64,000 nt of DNA, taken from positions 35,178,080 through 35,242,079 of the forward strand of contig OZ037765.1 in the NCBI GenBank assembly GCA_964035545.1. Reading direction: 5' to 3'. A program made the position numbers and the translations under genes. Source of the stretch: Bugula neritina. Lineage: Eukaryota; Animalia; Bryozoa. Each line of letters opens with the position of its first letter. The stretch's first letter is position 1. The notes below the pieces were generated by a model, which was not told the DNA's origin, made no database searches, and worked only from the letters and a program-made list of their open reading frames with translations. Positions 22,161-63,010 of this stretch are shown in pieces.

Positions 22161-23136
22161 ACTGCTGCCAGCAATGTCTGTGGCTGTCAGCAGATCTGAG
22201 TCTACATCAGAAGTAAGTAAAGGAGGTGGCTGTGGAGTTGAACTAGTTTATACAAGGAGAGCTGCCATAATGACACTTCATATCACTTGTGTAAGTATTT
22301 CACACATCGTGAACAAATATATTTCTACTAAAAACAAAAGGCAAGGGAGGGGAGTGCACAGTAAACAGCCAAGTTAATAAAACAAAGAGGAACAGCCTAG
22401 TCAATAAAACAGGGAGTGTGTAGGGAACAGCCAAGTTAATAAAACAGGGAGTGTGTAGAGAACAGCCAGTTTAAAAAATGGGCACTGTGCAGGGAACAAC
22501 CATGTTGATGGAAAACTAAAGTAATGTTTACTTTGCACTTCAAAGTGAAGATTGAAGATAATTTTACTACTTCACTATCCTAGCATCTCCGCACCATGAA
22601 GCTGTTATGAGGCATGAAGTTCTAGTGTTTACATAGTTTAACTTATATTATAAGAGGGTATATGCTCTCTGAGTGTGAATCCTGAGGGTACAATACATTC
22701 TACTATCTATGCTGGTGGTAAAAGAAAACAGCTAATTCTATGCTGAGATATCAGCCCTCCATCAGTATCGTAAAACTCCTAGCTATTCAATAAACAGTGG
22801 ATAGCATCTCCACCTGTGATACATGCCACCTTGACCTAGATGACTTATGACACCTTGGGTAACACATGTGACCTTGGGTGTCACATGTCACTTTGGGTGA
22901 CTTGTGACACCTTGAGCTGGGTGACAGGTGCCACTTTGAGTCACAGGTGGTTTCAGTGATGGGAAACTTCTTAAGTTATCTGATCAACTCCTAAATAATT
23001 ATCAAGTAATGCTTAAGAGTGACTGGAAAAATAAATTAAATGTTGTGCTTTTAAGCTAACTGAGCTCAGTGATAGCTTCAGAAAACCACAGTCTAATGAC
23101 TTATGTTTTGTCAACACTTTGCTCCATTCCTGGGAG

Positions 23137-31700: not shown

Positions 31701-33575
31701 TATTTACCGTAGACCCACAGACAGACTATTTACTGTAGACACACAGACAGAATACTTATAGTGTGTATAATGCTATTGTCAGCTCAACACAAACCTCAGA
31801 GTCACAGAGTGAAATTGGATATAAATAAGGTGTTTTGCTCAGTTATTCAGAGTTCATTTATTTGTGTAAATATCATATAATTGTAGAGAAATACAGAGTC
31901 TGGTTCAGACACTCTGGAGAAGAGCCACCTGATGATGAATGGTATCAAAGTGGCACAAGAAAATACACCATAGATGGTATAAAGAAGGAGGTTAAAGGTC
32001 ACACAATCACCCACATGATAGTAGATGGAGATCTACCATATAATATTCATCTACTGGCTCCAGAGCTGAGTCACCTGAGAGTGAAGAATGTCAAATCTGT
32101 CTCTAACCTGTCTGGGTAAGTATCCGATTATTATTAAGATGTTTAGGTAAAATAAAATAGGATGTTTTCAGTGGAGGTGCTAACATGTGAAAGTAGTCGG
32201 GTGGAACACATCAATACTAACCTTTTCACTACCAAACCAACATTCCTTGTTTTGTATCTGGAGGCAGAGTTCACATGATATGTAATTGTTTGAGTGATTG
32301 AAGTTTTTTATTTAAATTTTTACATAAAAATCCTGAGTAAAGATTGACATGTGGACAGAGCCTATGACACCATGTGTTGCTTTTCTGGAAATTTCTGATA
32401 TTCTCTGAGCTGACACTTTACAGCTAATTTTTAGGATGTAGACACTCTATGCTCTATAGTGTCCTCTTGACTCCAGTTCAGTCTGACAAATACAACTTTT
32501 TCTACAGTTTTGAAATTTAAAGATTTCAAAATCAGAGTTAGCTCCCAGGTTTTAAAAATTTGCTCTTTCATTCAATATTATTGTGTTTTATCAATTGAGT
32601 TATTACTATTCTGGTATAAATTAAACTTCAGTTAGGAATGATGAGCTGATGAAGATTAATCTACAGAGAGTGGTTATTGGCTGATGAGTTGTGTCTTTAG
32701 ATTTTTCTGTATCAGTTGGACCTGTCTTTGAGGTCAAAATAAAAAGAGGTCCTTTTGTTACACTAAATACTTATAAAATTATCTCCCAACTATAGATAGA
32801 CAAAAAGTTGAATATGTAATACATGTTGGCGCAGTGGTTTTGTAATGTATAACATGTTACATACAGTGTATAGTTTCTTAGACTAAAATAGTTGTATATG
32901 AAATAGACTAATATGTTGCTAGCTATTTCTTAGGACAATATAAAAACATAATTTTCTCTTATGTCTAAATACATTTCCGACTTTTCTAGTCAACAGAAAG
33001 TTAATTCATTAAGTTATTAGAAACATATTTCCAAGGTGTAATGCAGCTCAAAGTAACGGCTATCACATTGTACTTTTATTCCATTGCTTCTATACTACAT
33101 TTTATATAGATTTTAAGCATTTTAGATAGGTTTTGGCAAATAACCACAGTATAATAGTTTGAAATAATTTTTTATCCACTGTAGACATTTTTTACAAAGG
33201 CAGAGCAGCTTAATTGATTACTATACAACACCTAGGTATGTTAATTAATATCTAAATGTTGTGACAGATGAGAAAAGTGCCATGTCACAAGCATATAGCC
33301 ACCTTCTGCATGTCTTTTAATATTGTAACGTTTTGTTGTTGGGACATTACATGAGCTTGGAAAGCTTGTGGAATAATTACAGCTTTACTTGTATTATCAT
33401 AGCTAAATATATATATGTTAGCTACATTATGCTTTCCTACAATGATTTTTGCTATTACAGAATAGCTATATTTTTTTGACTGTTATATAAACCCAGCATT
33501 TTCTGTTATTCACTCTCCTTTCTCTTTTCATTCAGTTTGCGATAATAAACACACAAATATATACATATATATATT

Positions 33576-43000: not shown

Positions 43001-46000
43001 ATCACAGCAGCAGAAATTTATGAGGTGGAAATTGTAGCACACATTCGAAAGGTCACTTTGATATATAGGAAAATACTAAGAACTTCGAAGAAATGTCTAA
43101 TAAACAAGCTACATAGAAATTTCTGCAAGCATCCTTAAACTTTTTCACAGCACCGTAGGTTTGTTGACATGAAGCTTCAGGGCAGGTTATTTTGTGAACT
43201 ATGTTGTGTAAGTGTCCTTTATTAGTTTTGTCGTTGATGCTGAAATGCGAACTTAAGGGAATTCCTTTGAATATAATTCAGGCATTAAGTTCAATTGGAA
43301 GTGAGTCTGCAATGAATTTGTTGAGAAAATGAAATATAGCTTTTCTCCTGCTACCCCTTTATAACGTAGTTGAAGTAAAATGTGTTTCCTGTTGTCCTTT
43401 TCACTGAGTAGTCCGTCACGAATGTTGGTAACAGTTTTCTCTATTATGTATACACAATTCAAATTTGGTTAATTGTTGCTAATTCTTCTTCAATTGGGAA
43501 GTTGACATATCGTGCAAGACCAAACTTATAAAAGTGTCACTAAATTTTTTCAAATTTCAAATAAGTCTGCTGAATTTAGCCTGCCAAATACATTTTATTT
43601 CCTTTAGAAATAGATAGATGTATACTATATATCACATGTCAACTAGTATATATGTTTACTATAGCATGTCTAATCTGAAGAATCTGAAGACTCTTAATAT
43701 GTCATGGAATAACTTCAGTGAAGGATTACCTGATGTAGTCACATCAATGACATCTCTAAGGAAGTTGGATATGTTTAACTGTAACCTACCAACTCTACCT
43801 GAGAGGTTAGTGAAACCAACTTCATATGAAATTTTCTTTCAGTAATTTCAAAGAATTATTGAATTATATAATTCGATAATTAGACATACAACTATGATAG
43901 TAAATACAATTTGCTTTTAGTTTTGCAAATACATTTTATTTAATTCAAAATATGTTATTCGATCTATTATATTATATTATATTTAATTACATCTAATATT
44001 TTTATTCATTATAATATTTTATTATATTGCATCGTATCTCAAATAGTATATCATATATTTACCATAGCATGTCTAATCTGAAGAATCTGGAGACTCTTGA
44101 TATGTCAGGGAATAACTTCAGTGAAGGATTACCTGATGTAGTCACATCAATGACATCTCTAAGAGAGCTGAATATGTATAACTGTAAGCTACCAACTCTA
44201 CCTGAGAGGTTAGTAAATGCAAGCACCCTCCTATAAGTGTTTTGCCTCCATGTTTATAGACATGCATCTCCTGTTGCTATATATTGTTAAAATTATTGCA
44301 AATTTCTTATTCTATATTTAAAGTTAACCAAAAAGATGCTAAATAATGTTTGAACTCAAAAGAAATATCATGTTGAATATGCTACTCTATTAACTTATTC
44401 CGTAAAAAGCTGCATATATCCTGCTATATAAAATGTCTCAAATAGTATATGTTTACTATATAGCATGTCTAATCTGAAGAATCTGGACACTCTTAATATA
44501 TCAGAGAATAACTTCAGTGAAGGATTACCTGATGTATTCACATCAATGACATCTCTAAGGAAGTTGGATATTAGTGACTGTAAACTATCAACTCTACCTG
44601 AGGGGTTAGTTAAACCAACTTCATATGAAATTTTCATTCAGTAATTTCAAAGAATTATTGAATTATATAATTCAATAATTAGACATACAACTATAATAAT
44701 AAATACAATTTGCTTTTAGTTTTACAAGTACATTTTATTCAATTCAAAATATGTTATTATATTTATTATATTATATTTAATTACATCAAATATTTTGTTT
44801 TATTATAATATTTTATTATATTGCATCGTATCTCAACTAGCATATATTTACTATAGTATGTCTAATCTGAAGTATCTGGAGACTCTTAATATGTCAGTGA
44901 ATAACTTCAGTGAAGGATTACCTGATGTAGTCACATCAATGACATCTCTAAGAGAGTTGGATATTAGTGACTGTGAACTACAAACTCTACCTGGGAGGTT
45001 AGTAAATGCAAGCACCTTTCTAGTGTTTTGCCTCCATGTTTATAGACATGCATCTCCTGTTGCTATGTATTGTTAAATTTATTGCAAATTACTTATTCTA
45101 TATTTAAAGTTAACCAAAAATTTAGAATTTACCTGCATGTTTTGAGACTTATATTTTTTTGCTAAATAATTTGTGAAAATTTCTCAAATCTGTTGAATGT
45201 TTGCTTATATGATGTATACAATATGCAGATAAATAGAAGCTAATAAAGAGATGCTATACGTAATATTATAACATGTGGTTATATGGAATATATAAAACAT
45301 GTTCCAATATTTTAATTTCCTATAATGCTTGAATTAAGTAGAAGCTATAGTAAGCTGAGTTTATTAGACTTTTCTTGAAAAATAAAAAGCTTAAGCTTTA
45401 TTATGTAATATCCTGCAGACTAAAATCAGGTTCTGACCTAGCAATATAATGTATAGTTGATATCTAAATAAGTTATACAGTCGTTTGTTATACTATAAGC
45501 AGTAATAACCTTTAATTGAAGTGTTATAAATAATTAATTTGTATTTTGAAGTATGAAACAAAAATGAATTATTTTAGCAATTATCTGTAACTATGACAAA
45601 CATTATTATATATAAAAATATAAATGCATAAACTGTGAAGGGTATATACTTTGTATTCAGCTTGGTGTTGAAAAAAAGGACTCATGCAGTATATTTCACA
45701 TGTATATGTGAAATTCATATCTACTGATGTCTTTTATTCCAACTTGATACTCCATTAAATGAAATTTATTATAAATCAATGGGAAACTTTATGCTAAAAT
45801 TATGTTTCTATTGCTTTAGATGGTTGTATTACTACATGATGTCTCAACTAGTATATGTTTACTATAGCATGTCTAATCTGAAGAATCTGGAGACTCTTAA
45901 TATGTCAGGGAATAACTTCAGTGAAGGATTACCTGATGTATTCACATCAATGACATCTCTAAGGATGTTGGATATGTTTAACTGTAACCTACCAGCTCTA

Positions 46001-49000
46001 CCTAAGAGGTTATAGTGAAACCAACTACATATGAAATTTTCATCCAGTAATTTCAAAGAATTATTGAGTTATATAATTCAATAATTAGACATACAACTAT
46101 AATAATAAATACAATTTGCTTTTAGTTTTACAAATACATATATTTTGTCTTATTATAATAACTTATTATATTGCATCGTATCTCAACTAGTATATGTTTA
46201 CCATAGCATGTCTAATCTGAAGAATCTGGAGACTCTTAAAATGTCAGGGAATAACTTCAGTGAAGGATTACCTGATGTATTCACATCAATGACATCTCTA
46301 AGGAAGTTGGATATGTTTAACTGTAACCTACCAGCTCTACCTAAGAGGTTATAGTGAAACCAACTTCATATGAAATCTTCATCCAGTAATTTCAAAGAAT
46401 TATTGAGTTATATAATTCAGTAATTAGACATAGAACTATAATAATAAATACAATTAGCTTTTAGTTTTACAAATAGATATATTTTGTTTTATTATAATAT
46501 TTTATTATATTGCATCGTATCTCAACTAGTATATGTTTACTATAGCATGTCTAATCTGAAGAATCTGAAGACTCTTGATATGTCAGGGAATATCTTCAGT
46601 AAAGGATTACCTGACGTATTCACATCAATGACATCTCTAAGAGAGTTGAATATTAGTGGCTGTAGACTACCAACTCTACCTGAGAGGTTAGTAAATGCAA
46701 GCACCCTCCTAGTGTTTTGCCTCCATGTTTATAGACATGCATCTCCTGTTGCTATTTATTGTTAAAATTATTGCAAATTTCTTATTCTACATTTAAAGTT
46801 AACCAAAAATCTAGAATTTACCTGTATGTTTTGAGACTTACATTTTTTTGCTAAATAATCTGTGAAAATTTCTCAAATCTGTAGAATGTTTGCTTATATG
46901 ATGTATACAATATATATGCAGATAAATATAAGCTAATAAAGAGATGCTATGTAATATTATGACATGTGGTTATGGAATATATAAGGCATGTTCCAATATT
47001 TTAATTTCCTATGATGCTCGAATTAAGTAGAAGTTATAGTAAGCTGAGTTTATTAGACTTTTCTTGAAAAATAAAAAGCCTAAGCTTTATTATGTAATCT
47101 CCTGCAGACTAAAATCAGGTTCTGATCTAGCAGTATAATGTATAGTTAGTATCTATAAATAAGTTATGCAGTCGTTTGTTATACTATAAGCAGTAATAAC
47201 CTTTAATTGAAATGTTATAAATAATTAATTTGTGTTTTGAAGTATGAAACAAAAAGGAATTATTTTAGCAATTATCTGTAACAATGACAAACATTATTAT
47301 ATATAAAAATATAAATGCATAAACTGTGAAGGATACATACTTTGTATTCAGCTTGGTGTTGAAAAAAAGGACCCATACAGTATATTTCACATGTATATGT
47401 GAAATTCATATCTACTGATGTCTTTTATTCCAACTTGATACTCCATTAAATGAAATTTATTATATATCAATGGGAAACTTTATGCTAGAATTATATTTCT
47501 ATTGCTTTAGATGGTTGTATTACTATATGATGTCTCAACTAGTATATGTTTACTATAGCATGTCTAATCTGGAGAATCTGCAGAATCTTAACATGTCATG
47601 GAATAACTTCAGTGAAGGATTACCTGATGCATTCACATCAATGACATCTCTAAGAGAGTTGGATATTAGTTATTGTAGACTACCAACTCTACCTGAGAGG
47701 TTAGTAAATGCAAGCACCCTCCTAGTGTTTTGCCTCCATGTTTATAGACATGCATCTCCTGTTGCTATGTATTGTTAAAATTATTGCAAATTTCTTATTC
47801 TATATTTAAAGTTAACCAAAAATCTAGAATTTACCTGCATGTTTGGAGACTTACATTTTTTTTGCTGAAAAATCTGTGAAAATTTCTCAAATCTGCATGT
47901 TGAATGTTTGCTTATATGATGAATACAATATGCAAATAATTATAAGCTAATAAAGAGATGCTATGTAATATTATGACATGTTTATGTCAGTGAGTGTTCC
48001 AATGTTTTTTAATTGTTATTGTAATCGTTTGTGGATAAACAGATATTGTGATAAGAAAGTTTGGGTTAGTTTCGTGTGATAGGTAATCTTTAATCTGTCT
48101 CAAACCATAAGCCAGAGAATGTACTACAAACACACAATGAAGTAATACTGGTATAAGTAATGCTTAGACACAAAAATATTATATAACCAGTACAAGTAAT
48201 TACTATAACGTATGCTACAGAGTTTACACATAATACAAATTATTATAATAACCTTGTAACAATAGAATGAAGATGGGAAGCCAAACATATCAGCGTGTTG
48301 GGTTATAACTGTTATAGGTTAAATTGCTACAGAGTATTAGTATTAAGTATTTAGCTGATAGCCTGAGGTCTAAGTCAATTGTCAGACACTATCATCAACA
48401 TCTCCTTTTCTTTTATAAAAAGTTGGTATAAGTTTGATAATGTAATGAATGAATTATAATTGATTAGGTCAATATAGTTTTAGTAGCAAAAGGGTTGATA
48501 CGATAAAAGCTTAGTTAGTCTAGATCATGGGCTACTCCAACACATAGTCCTGGTATTTTGGATGCATTTTGAAGTGGGAAACAAAAAGGAATTATTTTAG
48601 CAATTATCTGTAACTATGACAAATATTATTATATAAAAACATATAAATGCATGAAATGTGAAGGGTATATACTTTGTATTCAGCTTGGTGTTGAAAAAAA
48701 AGACTCATGCAGTATATTTCACATGTATATGTGAAATTCACATCTACTGATGTTTTTTATTCCAACTTCATACTCCATTAAATGAAATTTGTTATATATT
48801 TCAATGGGAAACTTTATGCTAGAATTATATTTCTATTGCTTTAGATGGTTGTATTACTACATGATGTCTCAACTAGTATATGTTTACTACAGCATGTTTA
48901 ATCTGAAGAATCTGGACACTCTTAATATGTCAGGGAATAACTTCAGTGAAAGATTACCTGATGTATTCACATCAATGACATCTCTAAGAAACTTGTATAT

Positions 49001-52000
49001 GGAGCAATGTCAACTAGTAACTCTACCTGAGAGGTTAGTAGGAATGCATTAAATAAAATATTCATCAGTGTGAAGGATATAGTTCTGCAATAAGAGTATT
49101 TATTTTTCAAGTAAAATTATCTAAAGGTTTTAAAGTTAAGCTTGGAAAGTTCTACAGAAACAGTTTTACATACTTTTTGGGATTCCCTAAGTACAATATA
49201 TCAGGTTCACAGTAGAATCACAAGTACCAATTGTGTTAAATACTTCCCACTGAGAATCAACCTCCGGCTTGCCAACTGAGGCTCTAACCATTACACTCTA
49301 AGGACCACTGGGTAATGTCAATGCTACACTAAACTGTTCACATGTGCATTCAGTTCTGGGGTCCCATAAAGCTATTCTGTGTACAGTCACATATCTCTAA
49401 TCACAGCAGACTATAATATAATTCTACATACCCCCTGCCTTCAAATGACATCACAATTACTATAAGACACCAAATTATCATAAGCAGATTCTATGGAATG
49501 AAATATTAATATATAATTATATTATTATTATTATTGCAGTTATGTGTCATAAGGAAACCTCATCTTCATGTTGTTTAGAGACAAAACAGTTGCATTAAGG
49601 GCAGAGTTCATCAAGTTGTATTTTATATTAGGTTGCATGTAATACATAAGGATTTATATATCGAAACAGTTGTATACAGATGTAACTTTTTAAATGACAA
49701 ATTTGAAAAAAGTTGCTCGTTATAAATCTGCAATCATGTTTGCAAATTAATAAATATTGTAATGGATTTCAGTGGTTCAATTAATTGTTAGTTATTATAT
49801 TGAAAGGGTCGACTCTATATTGTATATTATTGTGGATATCGACAGCATCGACCTCCAGCGACTTGTATCTATGGTCGACAGTGGCACCACTAATAACAGC
49901 CAATCAGGACTGACATGCTAATTGGTAGCAGGTGGAGCTAGCTACTCGTAGTGGAAGCCGCTGAGTAGCTAGCCAGGCAAACCAGCTTGGGACTTCGCTT
50001 AGAGTAGTTGTGTGTAAAGTCTCACTTATTATGTAATCGTTCAATTCATGTTAGCAGTAATTCAATTCTTGTATCTTGTAAATAATAAACTTATCATAAC
50101 GTAAATAACCTGGTGTAGTAGCTTTGTTTAAGTCGACCCACATAACATAGTGAATTGTGAAATTCACTACAGTGGTGGCAGCGGTGGGATTCCACTTGAT
50201 ACAAATGCTCCTAGCCAGGGAGTAGAAAGAAGATAGCCGACGAGGACGACGCGCCCGGACAGGAACCGGCAGCATTAGAGGAGGATCACATAGGCGGCCC
50301 AGCGCTGCCTATGGACAGGTACCACTTGCGGGCTCCCATCTTCTCAGGGGAAGGAGATGTGGAGCAAGTCATCACTAAGTTTAGTGATGTGGCGGCCATT
50401 TGCAGATGGCTGAATAGGGTTACTCTGATCCAGCTGCGGTTATGTCTGACAGGGCCGGCGAAACCCTATGGAATAAGCAAGAATGTCGGTGACATATTTG
50501 AAGCATTACGAGCTTGGTTTGGATTAACCGCTCGAGATGCTCGCGTGCAACTCCAGGGGCTTAGAAGAAATCCTAAGACTAACCTGCGAGAGCATGCTAC
50601 CGTAGTCGAACGACTGGCACAAGTCGCCTAAGGCGACTTGCCTGCTGATAGTTGACAGAGCTTAGCACTGGATGCATTCCTCCAGTCTATTAACAACCTT
50701 GGGCTGAAACAGCATCTGCTGGTGGCCGAGGTTGAGACTATGGAGAGAGCTCTAAGGCTTGGGAATGCTTATTTCCAAGCTGATAGTGCGTGCCGACCTG
50801 GTACGACAATACAGCAGGTCGGAGCAGACGACGACGTGTCGACGTCACCGGCGAAGACAGCTGTACATGTCGCCTCGGCAGCAGCCGACGAGCCGACTAG
50901 CTTGACCACAAGCTTGGTTCGAGAACTGCTAGCCGAGATCAGGCAACTGCGCCAGCAGTGGACAGCCGAGTGACCCAGGAGGTCGTCGGTAGCTGTCGAC
51001 GACAGGCGCCGCCCCGTATGCTGGGGCTGTGGTAGTGGTGGGCACTTCATAAGAAGTTGCCCCCGCGGTAGTGGGAGGCAGTTAAACAGCAATGGCCCAC
51101 GATAACTTCCGCCGACCGTGGGCTCCAGTTTAACCCCCCAAGGCAGAGGCCAAGGCCCAAACCCCACCGGGTAAGGAGGCCGCCTTCGTCAGAGTGGCAA
51201 GCCCCAAGGAGAGTTAGTAGGCCGCAAGGCCCGCCAAAACTTCCGGCTTGGGCACTCAAAAATCGCTTTGAAGGTTTGCTTGATGAGGGAGTGAATGACG
51301 AGTGAGAGCGAAACAGGGATTTTCCTTGGTTGCCCACACGAGCATCAGCCCGAGAATTCACTCGGCCACCTGTGTGTGAGCAAGACCGAGATGTAACCTG
51401 CTTGCCCACGCGACGTCGACGACCCCCTCGCAACCGAAAAGCACAGGTGCATCCCCAACTCCATGCACATGAGGTGTCGTCTCAAGAGACGAACCGCTCA
51501 ATGAGCGCTCAGCCATATGGAAGCAGCTATTTCCTCCCGGGCAAACTTGCTGGCAAAGCTGTCACATTCCTGTTGGATACTGGGTGCACCACCAACCTAC
51601 TGAGTCGGCGTCTATTCGACACTCTCAGTGCCAGGGACAGGGCTAGCCTAGAACCATATGAAGGGGAGCACGGCACGTTGGCGGACGGGTCGTGTATTCC
51701 TTTCTATGGGGTAATCCAGTTGACTGGTAGAGTCCGTGATCAGACGACCAGTGAGACCTTCATCGTCAGTCAACTCAAGGAGGACGCCATCTTGGGCATG
51801 CCATTTCTGAAGCGACACAGGTGCTACATCGAATTTAACAAGTCGGCGGTGGTGATGGCCGGGCGTGAGCCGGCCTGTGTCGACCAATTTGGCCGACCTT
51901 TGGTGGGGGGAGTGCAGGTGGTAGAGCGTTGTACTGTACCTGGGCGCTCCCGGGCTACAGTTCGCTGCAGAGTGAACTGTAGGGAAATCTCCGAGTTAGG

Positions 52001-55000: not shown

Positions 55001-58000
55001 AAACCAAAAGGTGATCAACCTGCATGGTTCAATCTTAGAGCGAAGAAGCTAGTCCAGAAACAACGTGAAACGTATAACAAATTTAAACAAACAAATTACC
55101 CTTTTTTTCTGACAAAATACAAACAACAAAGACGTGACACTAAACGCACTCTGAGAGAACTAAGGAACAACTATACCACTGAAGTAGTATGCGGACCATT
55201 GGAAGCTGGAAACAGCAAACCCTTCTTTAAATATCTGAAGAATATTCAGAACAAAACAAAACCCATGCTGACACTTACTCACCCTAATGGTACTTCCACA
55301 ACTGATCCTCGAGAAAATGCTGAGATGCTCAATAATTTTTTTCAGCAACAGTTCTGCCAGCAAGATTTCTACACCGACGACCTCCCTTATCACTCTGATG
55401 ATCTGAATGTGACTCCCGATGGGGTGGAAAAGCTTCTGAACGATCTCAAAACTGGTAAGGCACCTGGTCCGGACGGACTTAACAAAGAGGATCTCTGCAT
55501 CGATACTAGATTGATAGCCAACTGCCTAACACTAATCTTTAACGCATCCTTGCGCAGTGCCAAACTTCCTGCGGGATGGAAGCTAGCCAACATCATCCCT
55601 GTCCACAAGAAAAGCCAGCTAGATATGCCAAACAACTATTGACCAATATCATTAACCAGTATACCTTGCAAGTTACTGGAACACATTGTGCTACACTATC
55701 TCAATAAACTGTTAGATCCCATCCTCCATAATCGTCAACATGGTTTCCGTCGTGGCTTGTCCTGCGAAACACAGCTTTGTGGAACCATCCATGAAATTGC
55801 CAGGTCAATGAACAACTCTCACACCACTCATGCTCTTGTTCTCGACTTCCAGAAGGCCTTCGACAAAGTCCCCCACAAGCTACTCATACATAAGTTAAGC
55901 GTCGTTGATGGAAATAATCCTCACATACTCCGATGGCTCCATAATTTTTTGACAAAGCGAGAGCAGCAAGTAATCATAGATGGCCACTCTTCTTGTAGAT
56001 TACCAGTCTTTTCTGGCGTTCCACAGGGCTCTGTCCTGGGGCCCACCCTATTCCTTCTTTACATCAATGATCTCCCTGATCTACTAAGTTGCAGTGTCAG
56101 TTTATTTGCTGATGACACACTGATTTTTCAAGAGGTAGACTCCCTAGATGATGTCCGAAAATTCCAAAAGAATATTGAACAGATTGAGAATTGGTCTCTG
56201 AAGTGGAAGATGCCGTTCAACTCCTCAAAATGCCGAATCATGTCATTTGGCAAAGATCCCCAAATTCAACCATCATATCGACTAGGGGGAGAAACATTGC
56301 CCTACGTAGATGAGATTACCTACCTTGGAGTTACACTACAATCTAACCTCAAGTTTCACAGCCACATAACTAAGAAAATAAACAAAGCATACAAGGTTCT
56401 TGGCATGCTAAAGCTATCCCTCTATGGAGCTCCCAAGAAAGCAAAGCTGCTGGCATATATGACTCTCTGCAGACCTATACTAGAATACGCTGCAACCACT
56501 TGGGATCCTGTAACAAAGCAACTTGTGAAAGAAATTGAGTTAGTCCATAACTGAGCTATTAGATTCATCTGCTGTCTCAAAGGCCGGGAGGCTAGCATCA
56601 GTGATGCAAGACAACAACTCAACATATCATCACTGGAAGATCGTCGCAAAAGCCTACGAATAACCCTCCTTTTGAAGATCTTGTCCAAAGAAGAATGTCA
56701 TCAGGCATTATCTTCCAGCTACACTGAACTGACAAGGGACAAGTCAACCGCTACGGTTACCACGAGGGCTGCCTCTAACGGAATACCAACTGCGATATCT
56801 GCCATGTGCACAGCATATCATAACAGCTTCCTACCGCGCACTATTAGAGACCTAAGAATTGGAACTCCCTAAATACTTGATAAATGATAACCTGAAAGGT
56901 ACTACAATTACCAAATTTAAAATGCATAATGTATGCAAATACAGTTATAATTCTATGTCAAATGTATTGTAACAAGCTGCTGAGGCACGCCTCTTGCACC
57001 TTATGGTGATCTAGCGTGTGCTAAAGTCGAAGTATTGAAGTAAGTATATTCAGTCTACTCGGAGGTTGTCTAATTATAATTGTTCATCGCTTTTATAATT
57101 AGTCTAAGGTTGACAATAGTCTACACTGTTAATCCCAGTGTAGTTATTGGTTGCAAGTAATTAATTATTCATTAATTCTTGCTGTTGCCTGGTTTATAAC
57201 TGCTTATCCCAGTCATAGCCAGTTTTATATTGTAGGCTGCAATAAATAAAGACAGGTTGTGGCAGCAAGAGAATAATCTTTTCTTGTCGCCTCCAGTTGA
57301 TACTGTATTTGATAAGTTATCCCTGTTAAAACAGTAGTCATAAACTTATCACAATAACCTCCGCAAGTAGTTGTGTAGAGGCAACGTTAGTTCACTCGCC
57401 TTACAGTAAAAATCTTTTACAATATTTTGTTGTATTTAGTTTACTTCAAAGTGGTGCAGTAACATTTCTACAGTAACACAATTGTATAGAGTTGGACATT
57501 TTTAAATGATGTATATAAGAATAGTTTGTCGACATTTTTGCAAATGCATAACAGTTTGAATAAGTGTTGGGTTGAGGTTGTGAAATATTTCTAAACATCT
57601 GTAAAAGTTGTAATCAGAAGGAATATATTTGCCGGATTTTGAGTTATTATAATATATGTTTATCTGAATTACAGTTTACAGTATCTGAAGAATCTGGAGT
57701 TTCTGAATATCGACAAAAACAATGATCTAGCCACTCCCCCTTATGAAGTGTGTAGACAAGGATTGTCAGCTATCAGGCAGTACTACAGAGATTTTGCTAA
57801 AGGTAAAGGTGAAAGTCTTCCACTAGTCACCATTGCAGTGATTGGTAACACAATGGCAGGGAAGACAAGTCTCATCAGAACCTTGCAGAGTGAAGAGAGA
57901 AAGAGAGTGCTGACAAAACGTGGACCTGAGGCTGTTGTTGATGAAACAACTAAAGTCTTTAAAGTTGAAGAGTTGAAAGTAAATAACACGGTTCTGAGAC

Positions 58001-61000
58001 TAATTGACATGGGAGGACAACCAGTGTACCACATGACTTACCAGTTAACACTTAAACAGAACTGCATCCCGATAGTAGTGGTGAACATGAAGCAGTATGA
58101 TCAGCTGGCACAGGAGAAGGGAGACAGAGAGGCTGTGAGAAGACTGGCTTTTGATTGGCTAGCTCATTTATACGTAGCAAATCCTGACATTGGACCACCA
58201 AAACTTGTATTTACTCACAAAGACAAGTTTGATGAGGAGAATTTCACAAGGATGACAACTGCTTTCACCAGCACAGCTGATCTACTGAAAGATGAAATAA
58301 TCAGAGAAGAGAAAAAACTTGACCAATGCATAGCGAAGATAGAGCACTTCCATCAACACAGAGAGCTGTTCTTGCTAGAAGATATCTACTCAGTTGGAAA
58401 AGAAGATAATTATCAAACATACGAAGTCATGAAAACTGCCATTTTTGATTCAGCTCAAAATTTTGTGAAAGTGCTGCCAAAGCTATGGGAAGATGTGAAT
58501 AAGAAAGTTTTAGGATTACAGACAGCATTCAGTACATTTGATGAGATACTTCGTACAGTGCAGCAAGTAGATAGAAGTATCACACCTGATCAGCTCGCCA
58601 TAATCCTCACCTACATGCATGATTGTGGTAAAGTCTTATGGTACAAGGATATTAAAGAGTTGAAGCTGATTATTTTTCAAAAAATTGAAGAAGTTACTAA
58701 ACTACTCACAATCTTGTTTCATCATGATGAAGATGTGTGGCAGACTCGGCAAACAAGTTTCAAACCACTGCTTCTAACTAACGGAGCTTTTCTTGAGGAA
58801 GAACAGCTCCATCAACTTACAGAGGATTTCCGGTCCTCAGGTATTCTAGACAATCAACTTTTAGAATATCTGATTCGAACAGAGACAGCATTTTTTGATA
58901 AAGATAAAAGTCAATTTGCTGTCACTTTGCTGCAGAAATTTAGCATTATCTACGGACCAGTTGATCTGGAGTCAAAAAGCTATTTCATTGTTCCCTTCCA
59001 CTCCCCTGATTACCTAGAGAACACTCTCAATACTGATCAAGACATTATTCTCCATGCTGAGATCATTTTCAAAGGTCTCTCAATCCCACAATATGTTTAC
59101 CAACAGATGAGTGTAGTTGTCCTACGAATGTTCCCAAATGAGACAAGTTTTCCCCTCGTTAAAAAAAACGGTGTGAAGGTTTATCACGATGATGTCTCAG
59201 TGTGCCTTGTCCATGACGGCCTCTCAAGGAAGGCAGAAGTTACAGTGTCTGGAGCAGCAGAGAAAATCACAGATTGTTGGAAACATATTGTCATGGTTAC
59301 CAGAAAGATTTCTAAAGAAGTCCAAAGTTCATGGCCTGCCAGCAGAATGGTTCACAAGTCTAGTTGTACACACTGCATACTGAAAGGTGAATCTGGTCCT
59401 AAGATTCAGGTAACTCCCAGTTGGTGTCTTGACTTTCAAACTGAGAAACCCTTTCAACGGTTTCAGAAGGAGATGGTGACAGTTCGCTGTGGGGAACATA
59501 AGATCCTAAGCCCATTCATGCACCCGTGTAAGTTTGTGTTGTGATAGTTTTTGAGATATAATTTGTTATAAAAATATCAATAACATTAACATGATAGTCT
59601 ATTTTTTCAAACATTAAGCATAAATTTACTATTTAATTAAAGTGCTTTAAGCTTTTCACTTAAATCAGCAGATTAGATATTAAATTCTAACAGTATTTTG
59701 CACCCTTAGAAATCCACTTGCCCTCTATCCTTTTGGCACACATGTTCAGTTCAGAAATGTACTGTGGGATTTAGGTAATCGTTTGAATGAGTCTGAAACC
59801 AAGGATATAGAAAGAAGCGTTCACAAGATAAAAAAAGAGAGAAAGGATTTGGAAATGCCCAAAAACAAGCCTGGTAATGTATCATACGTCTAAAACTGAA
59901 AAAACTCAGTTTTCATGCTGGGCTCATATAACTAATTAATCGAAATGTCAATATTCGCATTATTGATTATTAACGCATTTATAGACTTGTTTACAGCATC
60001 AACTACATCAAGTCAGCCCATTGAGGAACATGAAGAAAGTGATTTGTCTGATGATGATGACTATCTGCTGCCTGAAACTGATGCTGACAGAAAGAAACTT
60101 TATCTTCACCAGACACCTGCTCCTACAACTAAACAGAAAGTTAGAGACCTATTCTCACACTCTGATAAAGTGAGTTTTATTTAAACAACACAACCAGTTT
60201 AAGTCACTTTTTCAAAAAATGAATCCCGAATTGCTTGTTGGCTTGAGGTCTGAGAGTGTGAAAGCTAACATATGTTGGTTCATTTTTGTTCGCAACATCC
60301 AGGTGTTTCCAATGACCAGGAAAAGAGGCAGAGCTCTGATTATCAACAATAAAAAAGTGAAAGCTCATCTAGATAGACATGGCTCTGATGTAGATGTTAA
60401 AAATTTAGAAGATTTGCTGGAATCTTTTCAGTTTGATGTTGTTACCAAGACAGACCTCTCTGCTCAGGTGTTGACACATTGTGTTTTATGAATAAGTGAT
60501 GATATAGTTAAATATACTATCATCTGTTGTTATTGGTTGCAGCAAATTTAATTTTATATATGCCCTGGTCTAAGCACAAACAAAGATATACTCATTAGCT
60601 GATTAGAAATCTGAATAATGAGTGCTCTGTTTGGCTGTGTATTATGTTGTTTATAGAAACAATTGAAATTAAGCCCGAACCAAGTTACCCAACTATCTAA
60701 TAGAAATAAATATAATGAAATAGAAAATGATAACTTCAAATTAAACATTTTATAAATATTGAAATTTACTGAATGCAGACTAATGAAAATATTTTGTTGA
60801 TTAAACTTTTTCCACAAAGTAGACTGACAAAGTTTTCACATGATACTAAATGTAACTACAGGAGATGTGGGAAACAGTGAAGGGAGAAGTGAATGGTGTG
60901 AGGAATGCTGATCATGGAATGTTCTTCCTGTTTATTGGTTCTCATGGAGTTGAGAGTCATGTCTATGGATCAGATGGAAAGTTGGTGAAACTGATAGACC

Positions 61001-63010
61001 TGTATGACCTGCTGTCTGTTCCTCAGAACCCAGTGATTGCTGATAAACCTAAGCTGGTTGTCATCCAAGCTTGTAGTGGTGGTGAGTATCTATTGAGTTG
61101 ATGTTTTATTTATTTGAAATTTAGCCACAGAGAATGCATATTTTTGACTGTTATTATTCTGACTGTTTCCTAATAATAGATGCTTCAATCTTCAAACTAG
61201 CAATAGTCACATGGTAAACAATGTTATTCCATGGTAAACAGGTAGAAAAGATTTGGGTAAAAAAGGATACAAAGATGTAGAGACAGGAGAAGACAATGAA
61301 TTTGGTGATGAAGATGAGAGTGTGACTCAACCAGAAGTATTCACTCCTCCAAAGTACGTCTCTGGTGGATACTATAAAGGAGATGGAATTGAGAGACTTC
61401 ACTGTGAAAACCTGTTTATTATAAATGCCAGCTTTGATTGTGAGTGTCTTAACTGTTCTTCAAAAGTAGTCTTTGGCAAATTATATGAGTTAGATGCTGG
61501 TTTACTTTGATACAGTAATAAATTGTAGAGCAGAATTTAAAAAATCTTTTTAAGTATGATTACTGCATAGCATGACTCTATTTCCCCTTACAGTATTTCA
61601 TTCCATCAGCTTGTATTTATTTGATGACAGTGTAAACGTCTTAAAATCTTCATATGCTGATACCCTATACCATTAAGCATTGTTCATATGTCACATACTG
61701 TATATAAATATATACTGATGTAATATATTATAGTATTCACTTTGTTATAGCCTATGTGTCCATGAGATCTAATATCTATGGTTCTCTACTAGTCAGATGT
61801 CTGGTCAGAACGCTCTACCGTCATGCCTGTCACAGAGACATGTACGAGATCTACAAAGCTGTAAGCCTAACTATATACCAATTCCACAGGCTATTGTCTT
61901 CTAATGCTCTTCCTTTTATTGAGTTTGTAATACCTCATTAGCTGAAACTGAGTTGAATTACTATCTATACTCACTCAAACAGAAACATGGAACATAAAAT
62001 ATTGGGCTTTTACCAATAGATTTAAAACCTACATTTTCTCAGCAAAAATTCTAAGAAATATTTTCTAACTGTTTGATCATTCTGCCATCTAATTTTTCTG
62101 TGAAGTATTTGCATATAACTTTTAACCAGCTATATAAGGCTATAGGATGTGTGAGGCTTGAAATACCAACACGTGAAAATTTATAAATAGAGTTCAGGTT
62201 CTGTATACGAGATACTGTTAGAACATGTTACATATTCTATATACTAGATACTGTTAGAGTATGTTACATATTATATATACTAGATACTGTTAGATTATGT
62301 TACATATTCTATATACTATATACTGTTAGATTATGTTACATATTCTATATACTAGATACTGTTAGAACACGTTACATATTATATATACTAGATACTGTTA
62401 GAGTATGTTACATATTATATATACTAGATACTGTTAGAGTATGTTACATATTCTATATACTAGATACTGTTAGAGTATGTTACATATTCTATATACTAGA
62501 TACTGTTAGAGTATGTTACATATTCTATATACTAGATACTGTTAGATTATGTTACATATTCTATATACTATATACTGTTAGAGTATGTTACATATTATAT
62601 ATACTAGATACTGTTAGAGTATGTTACATATTATATATACTAGATACTGTTAGAGTATGTTACATATTCTATATACTATATACTGTTAGATTATGTTACA
62701 TATTCTATATACTAGATACTGTTAGAGTATGTTACATATTATATATACTAGATACTGTTAGAACATATTTCAGGTTCAACACAGAATCAGTGAGTACTGT
62801 AAGAGAAAGAAGGACATTCTAACTGGACAGCTGGTAGTTGCTAGTGACACTCTCTCTCATGGAAGGAAACTCTACCTGTTTCCTGGATACAACGGAGTTT
62901 CTGGTACAGATATCCATCAGGGAGCTACTCAGATAGAAGGAGAGAATAAACCAGAGTCAGTTGGCTCTACCATGTTATATAGAAAACGGAATTCATGTTC
63001 TATAATATAA
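25723..63010 (+). CDS. LRR-Roc-COR-caspase fusion protein (ROCO-family GTPase with a C-terminal caspase), about 1523 aa
   Basis: Phase-consistent GT-AG exons: 25723-25741 (tentative start, MEFSAT), 31887-32115, nine 141-bp LRR exons (43665-49033), 57675-59527 (last LRR, Roc, COR), 59775-59873, 59997-60169, 60303-60467, 60862-61081, 61242-61439, 61751-61860, 62774-63010; total 4572 nt with no in-frame stop. Confidence 0.8.
26046..26386. repeat. 26-bp minisatellite AGACACACAGACAGACTACTTACTGT, continued at 31681-31758 after the BEL insertion
   Basis: Same unit flanks both LTRs. Confidence 0.9.
26387..31680 (+). mobile_element. Non-autonomous, degenerate BEL/Pao-like LTR element
   Basis: ~407-bp TG...CA direct repeats at 26387-26793 and 31273-31680 (similar, not identical); 5-bp TSD CTGTA (26382-26386 / 31681-31685); broken gag with LKPFNG..WPEF (DUF1759-like), three Cys/His knuckle remnants and a Pao-type protease region (IDLLIGND); no RT/RH/IN seen. 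Confidence 0.88.
26817..29161 (+). pseudogene. Disrupted BEL/Pao gag-protease
   Basis: Fragments 26817-27122, 27167-27916, 27966-28436 and 28781-29161 separated by stops and frameshifts. Confidence 0.8.
31887..32115 (+). CDS. N-terminal coding exon of the LRR-Roc-COR-caspase gene (LRR N-cap-like)
   Basis: TTGTAG acceptor and GG|GTAAGT phase-2 donor matching the phase-2 LRR exons; ends in LRR-like LAPELSHLRVKNVKSVSNLSG. Confidence 0.7.
33555..33654. repeat. (TA)n microsatellite
   Basis: Seen directly. Confidence 0.95.
34600..37025 (-). mobile_element. Degenerate, internally deleted Gypsy fragment of the same lineage (gag, protease, ORF3 tail); LTRs not identified
   Basis: Frameshifted homology to the 10301-17799 element (FLLDTGCTTNLLSRRLFDT, SQLKEDIIHGM, VEKFSRPFVGGLQVV); boundaries approximate. 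Confidence 0.8.
37060..43155 (-). mobile_element. Tc1/mariner DNA transposon remnant, split by a Gypsy insertion
   Basis: HTH region with GSGRPRK (42764-42522) continues to ...KSLLTEK at ~42390, then resumes below 37399 with ..LRWAKKH..VIISDESTF..VMFWGCITSKGVGRL; Tc1-type end TA|CGGTGCTGTGAAAAAAG at 43155; other end lost near the (TA)n at 37030-37059. Confidence 0.85.
37400..42383 (-). mobile_element. Non-autonomous Gypsy LTR element (RT/RNase H and integrase core deleted)
   Basis: LTRs 42028-42383 and 37400-37767; 4-bp TSD CTAC; tRNA-Leu-type PBS 42009-42026; same PPT region as element 1; broken gag, protease fused in frame to the integrase zinc-finger region (ORF 39762..40952), ORF3 remnant ~38090-39110. 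Confidence 0.92.
43665..49033 (+). CDS. Tandem array of nine 141-bp phase 2-2 exons, each encoding a 24+23-aa LRR pair
   Basis: Exons 43665-43805, 44068-44208, 44464-44604, 44857-44997, 45868-46008, 46207-46347, 46546-46686, 47559-47699, 48893-49033; consensus MSNLKNLxTLxMSxNNFSEGLPDVFTSMTSLRxLxxxxCxLPTLPE; all bounded by AG and GT. Confidence 0.93.
49758..53438 (+). mobile_element. Non-autonomous Gypsy LTR element (deleted from early RT to the end of ORF3)
   Basis: ~414-bp LTRs 49758-50171 and 53024-53438; TSD ATAT; PBS 50173-50190; gag with stops, protease (FLLDTGC), RT start ending at WRFCVDY. Confidence 0.93.
53805..54005. repeat. Degenerate tandem repeat (TTAGTTAGAGTTGAGAATGGAG...) upstream of the LINE
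   Basis: Seen directly. Confidence 0.7.
54100..56900 (+). mobile_element. Inactivated non-LTR retrotransposon (LINE ORF2: APE endonuclease plus RT; CR1/L2-like group)
   Basis: LLNARSV, VCVTETH, GGGV, GDFN, LDL and SDH endonuclease motifs; KAPGPDG, QHGF, DFQKAFD, GVPQGSVLGP, YINDL and FADD RT motifs; C-terminal SFLPRTIRD; several in-frame stops (54377, 55640, 56552) and a frameshift. Confidence 0.92.
56968..57421. mobile_element. Probable solo LTR
   Basis: TGTAA...TTACA ends, 454 bp, internal AATAAA at ~57241, flanks GTAT/ATAT (one mismatch). Confidence 0.45.
57675..59527 (+). CDS. Large exon: final LRR, PPxEV hinge, Roc GTPase and COR domain
   Basis: LKNLEFLNIDKN LRR; TPPYEVCRQGLSAIRQY pre-Roc hinge; G1 GNTMAGKTS, G3 DMGGQ, Roc-type G4 THKD; COR motifs LPKLW and LTYMHDCGKVLWY. 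Confidence 0.92.
60303..63010 (+). CDS. Caspase (peptidase C14) domain exons, p20 plus p10, ending in a CaaX motif
   Basis: RGRALIINN, RHGSDVD, catalytic SHG, KPKLVVIQACSG, p10 YVSMR...GSLLV and KLYLFPG; last exon ends YRKRNSCSII-TAA (stop 63008-63010). Confidence 0.92.
62208..62766. repeat. 36-bp intronic minisatellite GATACTGTTAGAGTATGTTACATATTCTATATACTA
   Basis: About 15 copies running up to the last caspase-exon acceptor (62773). Confidence 0.93.

What the first reader, a model, noticed from the sequence alone, without database searches (positions are those of the whole stretch)
43665..49033. Nine interchangeable LRR exons with variation confined to the ligand-binding face
Seen: all nine exons are 141 bp, phase 2-2 and nearly identical, but differences cluster at the x positions of LxxLxLxxN/C. 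First repeat: K/E/D/E/E/E/K/Q/D, N/D/N/N/N/K/D/N/N and W/G/E/V/G/G/G/W/G. Second repeat: K/E/K/E/M/K/E/E/N, then MFN/MYN/ISD/ISD/MFN/MFN/ISG/ISY/MEQ, then N/K/K/E/N/N/R/R/Q. The scaffold (NFSEGLPD..TSMTSLR) is almost invariant and I found only a handful of synonymous changes. Established: these positions form the concave binding surface, and this pattern is typical of lamprey VLRs, plant NLRs and the exon-shuffled LRR-ROCO genes of brown algae. Inference: diversifying selection on a pathogen or allorecognition receptor in an animal ROCO gene.
Basis: partly seen in the sequence, partly recalled or inferred. Interest (0 to 1): 0.88.

Follow-up and report, generated by a model that had tools for sequence, protein, structure and literature searches.

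The report
Fast-evolving LRR exon cassettes, ROCO-caspase gene
Nine near-identical 141-base exons build the sensor arm of an animal gene that joins leucine-rich repeats, a GTPase switch and a caspase, and the residues on their predicted binding face change about three times faster than neutral DNA, as in immune receptors, though the function is untested.

Summary
Nine 141-bp exons sit at the stated coordinates. All have AG/GT splice sites and phase 2-2, all are open in frame, and each encodes two LRRs.

The exons follow an N-terminal exon (31887-32115). They precede a single Roc-COR exon (from 57675) and caspase exons, so this is one LRR-Roc-COR-caspase gene.

Diversifying selection is supported by four tests:
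- Minimum-event counts in this array give 5 synonymous against 46 non-synonymous changes.
- A codon model gives omega 9.3 at the xxLxLxx positions in this array, and 5.7 in 42 family exons. The LRT against omega=1 gives P=4e-8 and 1e-22.
- M2a beats M1a. The selected sites are 11, 14, 25, 33, 35, 37, 38, 40 and 42.
- In 11 independent exon pairs, x-site replacement divergence (0.209) exceeds flanking-intron divergence (0.077). Other replacement sites lie below it (0.048).

An extreme-recombination null did not reproduce the signal.

"Confined" overstates the pattern, because about half of the replacements lie outside the ten canonical x positions.

The scan had already found the same pattern in the neighbouring gene. 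The closest published parallel is the brown-algal LRR-ROCO family.

The parts
31887..32115 (+). N-terminal coding exon (…WFRHSG…HITHM… motif). It enters in phase 1 and leaves in phase 2 with donor GTAAGT. No ATG lies in it, so a short first coding exon is still unlocated.
   Evidence: Sequence read. BLASTP to Watersipora P0036 N-terminus E=2e-4. The paralogous gene 46 kb downstream has the same exon.
43665..43805 (+). LRR cassette exon e1 (x-site signature K N W / K D MFN N); followed by an A-type intron
44068..44208 (+). LRR cassette exon e2 (E D G / E N MYN K); followed by a B-type intron
44464..44604 (+). LRR cassette exon e3 (D N E / K D ISD K); followed by an A-type intron
44857..44997 (+). 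LRR cassette exon e4 (E N V / E D ISD E); followed by a B-type 870-bp intron that is 4.3% diverged from intron 7
45868..46008 (+). LRR cassette exon e5 (E N G / M D MFN N); weak donor GTTATA
46207..46347 (+). LRR cassette exon e6 (E K G / K D MFN N). It is the youngest duplicate of e5: 2 differences, both replacements at x sites. Weak donor GTTATA.
46546..46686 (+). LRR cassette exon e7 (K D G / E N ISG R)
47559..47699 (+). LRR cassette exon e8 (Q N W / E D ISY R)
48893..49033 (+). LRR cassette exon e9 (D N G / N Y MEQ Q), the most divergent. Its nearest flank relatives are exons of the contig-8 arrays.
45842..45867 (+). Example of the conserved 26-nt acceptor-proximal intron element that ends in the AG. 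It is present in front of seven of the nine exons with up to 3 mismatches and in looser form before the other two. It is also conserved in the contig-8 arrays. No inverted copy occurs in the window.
57675..59527 (+). Single large exon: last LRR, Roc GTPase (P-loop GNTMAGKTS, switch II DMGGQ), COR-A and COR-B. The acceptor AG at 57673-57674 is phase-2 compatible with e9. The 3' end is approximate (GTAAGT at 59528).
60291..60467 (+). Caspase exon, start of the large subunit. Limits are approximate and lie inside open frame 60174-60488.
   Evidence: Pfam PF00656 E=4.7e-10; tblastn with P0030 and P0048
60859..61080 (+). Caspase exon carrying the catalytic His (SHG) and Cys (QACSGG). Limits are approximate.
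   Evidence: Pfam PF00656 E=2.2e-9; translation
61750..61863 (+). Caspase small-subunit exon. Limits are approximate.
   Evidence: tblastn with P0030 and P0048
62864..63007 (+). Last coding exon (5' limit approximate). It ends …RKRNSCSII followed by a stop: a polybasic + CaaX-type tail.
   Evidence: translation; paralog conservation

Best explanation
The nine exons are tandemly duplicated two-LRR cassettes. Together with one N-terminal exon and the first repeat of the Roc exon, they form the sensor arm of a single-chain LRR-Roc-COR-caspase protein. The array grows and is reshuffled by tandem exon duplication, unequal crossing-over and sequence exchange between cassettes of this gene and of five close paralogs. 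Equal length (141 bp) and symmetric phase 2 mean that any gain, loss or skipping of a cassette keeps the reading frame. Selection favours amino-acid change at the solvent-exposed residues in and just after the two beta-strands of each cassette (unit positions 11, 14, 33, 35, 37, 38, 40 and 42). The hydrophobic LRR core and the helix side are held nearly constant. Shown here: anatomy, phase, family size, omega above 1 at those sites, and x-site replacement divergence above intron divergence. Inferred: the concave face binds a variable, probably intracellular non-self ligand; binding releases the Roc-COR GTPase switch; the fused caspase is then activated by proximity, in the manner of NLR/inflammasome logic with a ROCO module in place of a STAND NTPase.
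For: Anatomy: nine AG/GT, phase 2-2, open 141-bp exons. The N exon leaves in phase 2 and the Roc exon enters in phase 2. Roc, COR and caspase Pfam hits with an intact P-loop and His/Cys dyad.

Selection in this array: 5 synonymous against 46 non-synonymous minimum events, with x-site replacement density 5.9 times synonymous density, P=3e-5. M0 omega=2.86 (P=0.006). Omega at xxLxLxx=9.25, LRT against 1 P=4e-8.

Selection in the family (42 intact exons): omega_x=5.7 against 1.29, 2dlnL=96.5. M1a against M2a gives 2dlnL=125-135, with 19% of sites at omega about 6.

Neutral benchmark: in 11 independent pairs with homologous flanks, intron p=0.077, pS=0.057, pN(x)=0.209 (Fisher P=5e-11) and pN(non-x)=0.048.

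Controls: simulated nulls with neutral x sites, with and without extreme recombination, gave omega_x 0.7-1.7 and LRT up to 12.4.

Structure: the AF2 model of the homologous Watersipora 47-aa units puts strands at unit positions 9-13 and 33-37 and a helix at 21-26. The model matches InlA, SHOC2 and CtRoco LRR solenoids at TM about 0.75.

Duplication and exchange: two intron classes alternate. Fifteen of 45 site pairs fail the four-gamete test. Exons of this array interleave with those of paralogous arrays in the tree and by flank homology.

Family: at least 71 Roc-COR exons in the genome, nearly all open. Watersipora paralogs carry 2 and 4 such units, varying at the same positions.
Against: Inclusion of all nine exons, and even expression of the gene, is therefore unproven.

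The first coding exon with the ATG was not found, and a 5.3-kb insertion sits between the promoter-proximal region and the N exon.

e5 and e6 have a weak GTTATA donor.

Synonymous sites of the youngest pairs are more conserved than their flanks (0 changes where about 5 are expected). dS alone would therefore exaggerate omega, which is why the intron benchmark matters.

The codon model was my own implementation with branch lengths scaled from a poorly resolved nucleotide tree.

The structural mapping uses a moderate-confidence model (pLDDT 69) of a homolog, not of this protein.

Site 25, in the helix, is also selected, so the binding-face story is incomplete.

Ligand, GTPase control and caspase activation are entirely inferred.
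Confidence: 0.72

Rival explanations
1. Relaxed constraint only. The exposed x positions drift neutrally after recent exon duplication while the scaffold is conserved, so variation clusters there without any positive selection.
For: Clustering at exposed sites is what purifying selection on the core alone would produce. The youngest pair, e5/e6, has x-site pN 0.08 against intron 0.05, which is not significant on its own.
Against: X-site replacement divergence is 2.7 times flanking-intron divergence and 3.7 times synonymous divergence in 11 independent pairs (P=5e-11). Omega_x is 5.7-9.3, with LRTs of 30 and 96.5. Simulated neutral x sites gave omega_x 0.7-1.7.
Confidence: 0.07
2. Concerted evolution with protected sites. 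Gene conversion keeps exons and introns similar, so neutral divergence underestimates age. Old differences at binding residues persist because conversions that erase them are selected against. The substitution rate is not accelerated; diversity is maintained.
For: Four-gamete failures within 141 bp. Blocks such as MFN and ISD recur in exons with different intron classes. Exons of different genes interleave. Young pairs have fewer synonymous changes than their flanks predict.
Against: Conversion tracts would have to skip single codons repeatedly. Positions 14 and 38 carry 8 and 12 different residues among 42 exons, which needs many new substitutions. The very young pairs differ by single-nucleotide replacements at x sites, for example e5/e6. 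This rival still implies selection for diversity, so it changes the mode rather than the conclusion.
Confidence: 0.13
3. The selection signature is historical and this copy is a decaying or silent gene. The first exon may be missing, transposons fill the introns, and two cassettes have weak donors, so the array has no present function.
For: No ATG exon was found. There is an insertion upstream of the N exon. Gypsy and LINE elements lie in the 11.5-kb and 8.6-kb introns. e5/e6 have GTTATA donors. Broken cassettes exist elsewhere in the family. There are no RNA data.
Against: All nine cassettes, the 1.85-kb Roc-COR exon and the caspase exons are open, with intact motifs and compatible phases. 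Non-x replacement divergence is below intron divergence. Transposons in introns are normal for this genome.
Confidence: 0.08

Closest known systems
Brown-algal LRR-ROCO genes (Ectocarpus, Saccharina): Zambounis et al. 2012, PMC3341825; Teng et al. 2024, PMC11378527
   Same: LRR arm in front of Roc-COR. Repeats are encoded by equal-length, phase-2 symmetric exons in tandem arrays. There is exon duplication and shuffling, and gene clusters with birth and death. PAML site models pick four sites on the concave face (14, 16, 18, 19 of the 24-aa exon). By my inference these correspond to LRR positions 3, 5, 7 and 8, the same as unit sites 33, 35, 37 and 38 here.
   Different: Here one exon holds two LRRs (141 bp, not 72 bp). 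The host is an animal. The C-terminal effector is a caspase with a CaaX tail, whereas the algal proteins end after COR. Alternative splicing of cassettes is documented in the algae and is untested here. Common descent of the exon architecture was not tested and is unlikely; convergence is the simpler reading.
Watersipora subatra (bryozoan) RefSeq proteins annotated 'malignant fibrous histiocytoma-amplified sequence 1 homolog' (P0030 = XP_067947674.1, P0033, P0154)
   Same: Same LRR-Roc-COR-caspase layout (33-35% identity over Roc-COR). P0033 and P0154 carry tandem 47-aa two-LRR units with the same scaffold (…NxFSEGLPxV…) and variation at the same unit positions. Unit number differs (4 against 2) between near-identical paralogs.
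   Different: Different genus. These are automatic names only, with no published analysis that I could find. Human MFHAS1 itself has no caspase and no cassette array.
Plant NLR / receptor-like protein LRRs and lamprey VLRs
   Same: Hypervariable, positively selected xxLxLxx residues on the concave beta-sheet over a conserved LRR core. This is established knowledge and is restated in PMC3341825.
   Different: The switch here is Roc-COR, not NB-ARC/NACHT. Nothing indicates somatic assembly: the cassettes are ordinary exons with AG/GT inside the gene, not promoterless donor cassettes beside an incomplete gene as in VLRs.
Prokaryotic Roco proteins (Chlorobium tepidum CtRoco: 3DPU, 6HLU, 8R4B; Methanosarcina barkeri 4WNR)
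   Same: They are the closest solved structures by sequence for the Roc domain (E=1e-9 to 1e-8). The CtRoco LRR is among the best fold matches of the LRR model (TM 0.75). The LRR-Roc-COR order is the same.
   Different: No caspase, no exon cassettes, and no evidence of hypervariable LRRs.
Fungal NLR-like HET-D/E (NWD) WD40 repeat genes (from my own knowledge, not checked here)
   Same: Near-identical tandem repeat units exchanged between paralogs, with positive selection on a few surface positions per repeat. They are cytosolic non-self or allorecognition sensors that trigger cell death.
   Different: WD40 rather than LRR, a NACHT switch, repeats not split into exons, and a different kingdom.

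Membership tests
ROCO proteins (Roc GTPase followed by COR) | Roc (Ras of complex) GTPase domain with P-loop and switch II | tested here: met
   PF08477 scores 30.5 bits against a cut-off of 27. GNTMAGKTS and DMGGQ are read in the translation. phmmer to CtRoco 3DPU gives E=8.6e-10.
ROCO proteins (Roc GTPase followed by COR) | COR domain directly C-terminal of Roc | tested here: inconclusive
   COR-A (PF16095) E=2e-5 at 25 bits is below the cut-off of 35.3. COR-B (PF25497) at 15 bits is below 27. Both lie in the right order and place. Several ROCO proteins found with the Watersipora LRR query carry both COR families in precomputed Pfam.
Caspases (Peptidase C14) | Caspase fold with catalytic His and QACxG Cys | tested here: met
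   PF00656 scores 40.0 and 37.8 bits against a cut-off of 21.4 on two exons. SHG and QACSGG are read. Activity was not tested.
Exon-shuffled LRR-ROCO receptors of brown algae | Each LRR encoded by its own 72-bp phase-2 exon | tested here: not met
   Here there are 141-bp phase-2 exons with two LRRs each. The principle is the same but the unit differs (PMC11378527).
Exon-shuffled LRR-ROCO receptors of brown algae | Diversifying selection on concave-face residues of the cassette exons | tested here: met
Exon-shuffled LRR-ROCO receptors of brown algae | Alternative splicing of LRR cassette exons | not testable with these tools
Lamprey VLR-type somatically assembled LRR receptors | Incomplete germline gene flanked by promoterless LRR donor cassettes copied in somatically | tested here: not met
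   The cassettes are in-frame exons with canonical AG/GT inside one gene. Somatic change itself could not be tested.
Dscam-type mutually exclusive exon clusters | Docking site and selector sequences (complementary intron elements), or introns too short for double inclusion | tested here: not met
   Introns are 198-1193 bp. The conserved 26-nt intron element has no inverted copy in the window. This was a limited test: only that one element was searched.
NLR / STAND immune receptors | NACHT or NB-ARC NTPase between sensor repeats and effector | tested here: not met
   Pfam finds Roc/COR and no NACHT or NB-ARC in the 622-aa central exon. The resemblance is in logic only.

The most novel reading that the evidence does not exclude
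The cassettes are used combinatorially. Because every exon is 141 bp and phase 2-2, regulated skipping (perhaps favoured by weak donors such as those of e5/e6) or somatic exchange between cassettes could give different cells or zooids different LRR arms. A few germline ROCO-caspase genes would then yield a large anticipatory repertoire, making this an animal counterpart of Dscam or VLR diversity built on a ROCO-caspase chassis.
Probability: 0.1. Interest if true: 0.95.

Novelty: new variant of a known kind. Interest (0 to 1): 0.68.

Why it matters
Animals are thought to build intracellular pattern sensors mainly on NACHT/NB-ARC switches. Here a large family couples a hypervariable, positively selected LRR face to a ROCO GTPase and directly to a caspase. 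The family has at least 71 Roc-COR exons in a 216-Mb genome, and six close paralogs carry these cassettes. That would be a third way to wire recognition to cell death. It would also be a striking convergence with brown-algal LRR-ROCO genes, down to symmetric phase-2 repeat exons and the same selected LRR positions. It gives colonial bryozoans, whose immunity and fusion/rejection genetics are essentially unknown, a concrete candidate receptor family. I found no paper in the held library describing it.

Tried and rejected

2. More of the family. The contig-8 arrays are therefore sampled only through 3-kb loci, and the set of 42 exons is not the whole family (at least 98 candidate copies).

3. 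Joined nine-exon protein. Exons were handled one by one by reference, and the structure was taken from a Watersipora homolog (P0033:100-345).

4. Metagenome scan for an invariant 21-mer of the cassettes found 0 hits.

5. Dscam-like docking/selector idea. No inverted copy of the conserved intron element was found.

6. Amphioxus caspase paper (PMC3196919) and the Aravind death-domain paper (PMC8195603). Neither describes a ROCO-caspase.

7. Start codon. Homology with the paralog places the promoter-proximal region at about 25.1-26.4 kb. I did not find a convincing ATG exon.

8. My first null simulation was partly stuck at its starting value omega_x=1. It was repeated with other starts and with recombination.


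Full report
**Observation**

BLAST of the first exon against the window returns nine full-length copies and nothing else of comparable score. They start at 43665, 44068, 44464, 44857, 45868, 46207, 46546, 47559 and 48893.

Each copy is 141 bp and preceded by AG. Seven are followed by GTTAGT and two by GTTATA. Each consists of one base, 46 codons and two bases, so both flanking introns are phase 2. All nine are open in that frame.

Each exon encodes two leucine-rich repeats (Pfam LRR_1, LRR_8, LRR_4).

**The gene**

- Upstream, an exon at 31887-32115 ends with two codon bases and a GTAAGT donor, so it is phase-compatible with e1. It resembles the N-termini of bryozoan homologs. The paralogous gene 46 kb downstream conserves it. 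It has no ATG, so a short first exon remains unlocated.
- Downstream of e9, an 8.6-kb intron full of gypsy and LINE fragments leads to an acceptor at 57673-57674. A 1.85-kb exon follows. It starts with one more LRR and carries Roc (above Pfam threshold), COR-A and COR-B (below threshold, right order) with an intact P-loop.
- Caspase exons follow, with SHG and QACSGG. The frame ends in a polybasic-CSII tail.

This is therefore one LRR-Roc-COR-caspase gene of about 31 kb or more.

The nearest annotated proteins are RefSeq models of the bryozoan Watersipora subatra with the same layout. Earlier scan notes also call this genome a bryozoan. I did not verify the species.

**Family**

- The Roc-COR exon has 71 scored matches (124 candidates) in the 216-Mb genome, nearly all open. 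Six, at about 80% identity, form the subfamily with 141-bp cassettes.
- The cassette itself has at least 98 candidate copies, clustered on contig 1 at 35.22-35.49 Mb (near the contig end) and on contig 8 at 4.81-5.03 Mb.
- From the window, 200 kb downstream and 30 short loci I collected 48 copies. Forty-two are intact: 141 bp, AG/GT, no stop.
- Array sizes differ. This gene has nine. The 7+6 of the neighbouring region share the only Roc-COR exon found downstream of them.

**Is the variation more than neutral?**

*Tree-free minimum events in this array.* There are 5 synonymous and 46 non-synonymous events where neutrality predicts about 1:3.6 (P=0.02). The replacement density at the ten pre-specified xxLxLxx codons is 5.9 times the synonymous density of the exon (P=3e-5). 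That of the other codons is not different from it.

*Nei-Gojobori.* This gives piN/piS=2.25 for the array and 1.64 for the 42 exons.

*Codon model.* I wrote a GY94 likelihood with branch lengths scaled from an IQ-TREE nucleotide tree.

| Data set | Result |
|---|---|
| This array | M0 omega=2.86 (P=0.006 against 1); omega_x=9.25 against 1.70; LRT for omega_x=1 is 30.0 (P=4e-8) |
| 42 exons | omega_x=5.7 against 1.29; LRT 96.5 |
| 42 exons | M2a beats M1a by 2dlnL 125-135; 19% of sites at omega about 6 |

The sites with posterior above 0.5 are 11, 14, 25, 33, 35, 37, 38, 40 and 42. A tree built from all sites is dominated by the x sites. It therefore minimises inferred change there, which makes the test conservative.

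*Intron benchmark, independent of synonymous sites.* I used 11 non-overlapping exon pairs in which both 250-bp flanks are homologous.

| Class | Divergence | Count | Test against flanks |
|---|---|---|---|
| Flanking intron | 0.077 | 372/4815 | reference |
| Synonymous | 0.057 | 19/333 | P=0.20 |
| Replacement at x codons | 0.209 | 56/267.5 | Fisher P=5e-11 |
| Replacement elsewhere | 0.048 | 44/917 | P=0.001, below flanks |

The binding-face positions thus evolve about three times faster than neutral DNA, and the scaffold at about 0.6 times.

*Controls.* I simulated data with neutral x sites, first on the real tree. I then simulated four independently shuffled blocks with the tree re-inferred, as an extreme-recombination null. 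These gave omega_x 0.7-1.7 and LRTs up to 12.4. That is far from the observed values.

*One caveat.* The four youngest pairs have no synonymous change, although their flanks differ by 3-5%. Synonymous sites may be constrained, or the exons may have been converted. This is why I rely on the intron benchmark.

**Where are the selected sites?**

I could not fold the joined protein because joining exons was excluded. I folded residues 100-345 of Watersipora P0033 instead. It contains four homologous 47-aa units.

The model has pLDDT 69 and pTM 0.71. It shows a regular strand-helix solenoid with strands at unit positions 9-13 and 33-37 and a helix at 21-26. It matches internalin A, SHOC2 and the CtRoco LRR at TM about 0.75.

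- Sites 11, 33, 35 and 37 lie in the strands, at the outward-facing alternate positions.
- Sites 14 and 38 directly follow the strands.
- Sites 40 and 42 lie in the following loop.
- Site 25 (V/F) lies in the helix.

"Confined" is too strong: 22 of 46 replacements in this array are outside the ten canonical x codons, and 12 of those are scattered.

**How the array changes**

- Two intron classes alternate: short A-type after e1, e3, e5 and e6, and B-type after e2, e4, e7 and e8. This indicates an ancestral two-exon unit that was duplicated.
- Introns 5 and 6 differ by 5%. Introns 4 and 7 differ by 4.3% over 866 bp.
- e5 and e6 differ by two single-base replacements, both at x sites.
- Fifteen of 45 informative site pairs within 141 bp fail the four-gamete test.
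- Blocks such as MFN and ISD occur in exons with different intron classes.
- Exons of this array are interleaved with those of paralogous genes, both in the tree and by flank homology.

Tandem duplication, exchange between cassettes and new point substitutions all contribute.

**Splicing**

A 26-nt element ending in the acceptor AG is conserved before the exons, even between contigs 1 and 8. It has no inverted copy in the window, so I see no Dscam-type docking/selector arrangement. Introns of 198-1193 bp impose no steric exclusion.

The Watersipora RefSeq models include consecutive units in one mRNA model. This favours constitutive inclusion, but it is only gene-model evidence from another genus.

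e5 and e6 alone have a GTTATA donor, and read-through meets a stop at once. They may be skipped.

**Function (inferred)**

- The single-chain layout, the absence of any detected secretion or membrane segment in the parts found, and the CaaX tail predict a cytosolic, membrane-tethered protein.
- Its hypervariable LRR face senses an intracellular ligand.
- Its Roc-COR switch controls a fused caspase.
- This makes a pathogen or effector sensor more plausible than a cell-surface allorecognition receptor. Sensing after cytoplasmic contact between fused colonies is not excluded.

**Comparison with what is known**

The closest published system is the brown-algal LRR-ROCO family. It has 72-bp phase-2 exons with one LRR each, exon shuffling, alternative splicing, and PAML-selected sites on the concave face (PMC3341825, PMC11378527).

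The present case shares that logic. It differs in the unit (two LRRs, 141 bp), the kingdom and the caspase effector. I found no paper on animal ROCO-caspase cassette arrays.

The scan itself had already reported the same pattern in the neighbouring gene (s1-487198) and the family size (s1-487177). My data set includes that neighbour's exons and agrees with those notes.

**Limits**

- No RNA or population data.
- The family was only partly sampled.
- The codon model was home-made.
- The structure comes from a homolog.
- The 5' end is incomplete.

Noticed in passing
window 46009-46014 and 46348-46353: e5 and e6 are the only 2 of 42 family cassettes with donor GTTATA, a TA insertion relative to GTTAGT. 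Reading through gives TAG at once. They are the youngest duplicates and may be skipped or poorly spliced.
   Followed up: partly
window ~3100-22250, minus strand: Exons of a prominin gene (Pfam PF05478 pieces covering profile positions 90-154, 519-570 and 648-726). A long open Ty3/gypsy pol frame (11435-16105, plus strand: protease, RT, RNase H, integrase) lies in one of its introns.
   Followed up: partly
window 26380-31680: About 5.3 kb is present here but absent between the homologous segments of the paralogous gene (585 bp there). It is bounded by a duplicated stretch (26660-26803 resembles 31547-31690). It is probably a transposon insertion between the promoter-proximal region and the N exon of the ROCO-caspase gene. 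Its ORFs have no Pfam hit.
   Followed up: partly
L051:129-269 and L051:6754-8673 (JGI metagenome sample 3300002729): A related species' copy of the gene. Its Roc-COR is 85-86% identical in DNA, split there by a frameshift in the called genes. One 141-bp cassette is 90% identical to e2, with its own x-site signature (D W / E S MQN E). The cassette architecture is therefore shared across species.
   Followed up: partly
P0033 and P0154 (Watersipora subatra, same 67-Mb contig): Two near-identical ROCO paralogs differ in the number of 47-aa cassettes (4 against 2). Only P0154 retains the caspase. This shows cassette copy-number change and effector loss among recent duplicates in another bryozoan.
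   Followed up: no
window 62975-63007: The frame ends …RKRNSCSII, a polybasic stretch plus CaaX-type box. This fits the earlier notes on this window and implies a cytosolic, membrane-tethered protein.
   Followed up: partly
G000 contig 1, 32.5-35.5 Mb, and contig 6, 2.5-6.3 Mb: Most of the 71 scored Roc-COR exons lie in two large clusters. The contig-1 cluster occupies the last ~3 Mb of a 35.64-Mb contig, so it is possibly subtelomeric.
   Followed up: no
exon pairs A7_4/A7_6, A1_7/A2_1, A1_4/A1_6 and window e5/e6: The four youngest cassette pairs have no synonymous difference, although their flanking introns differ by 3-5% (about 5 expected, P about 0.008). This hints at constraint on silent sites (splicing enhancers?) or exon-limited conversion.
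   Followed up: partly
window 3587-4279, 7223-8668, 62187-62819: Three minisatellite-like arrays give long spurious open frames (repeated YSTTVQY…, YCHSGIVTVVLSQW… and ILDTVRVCYIFY… units). The last lies in the intron before the final caspase exon.
   Followed up: no
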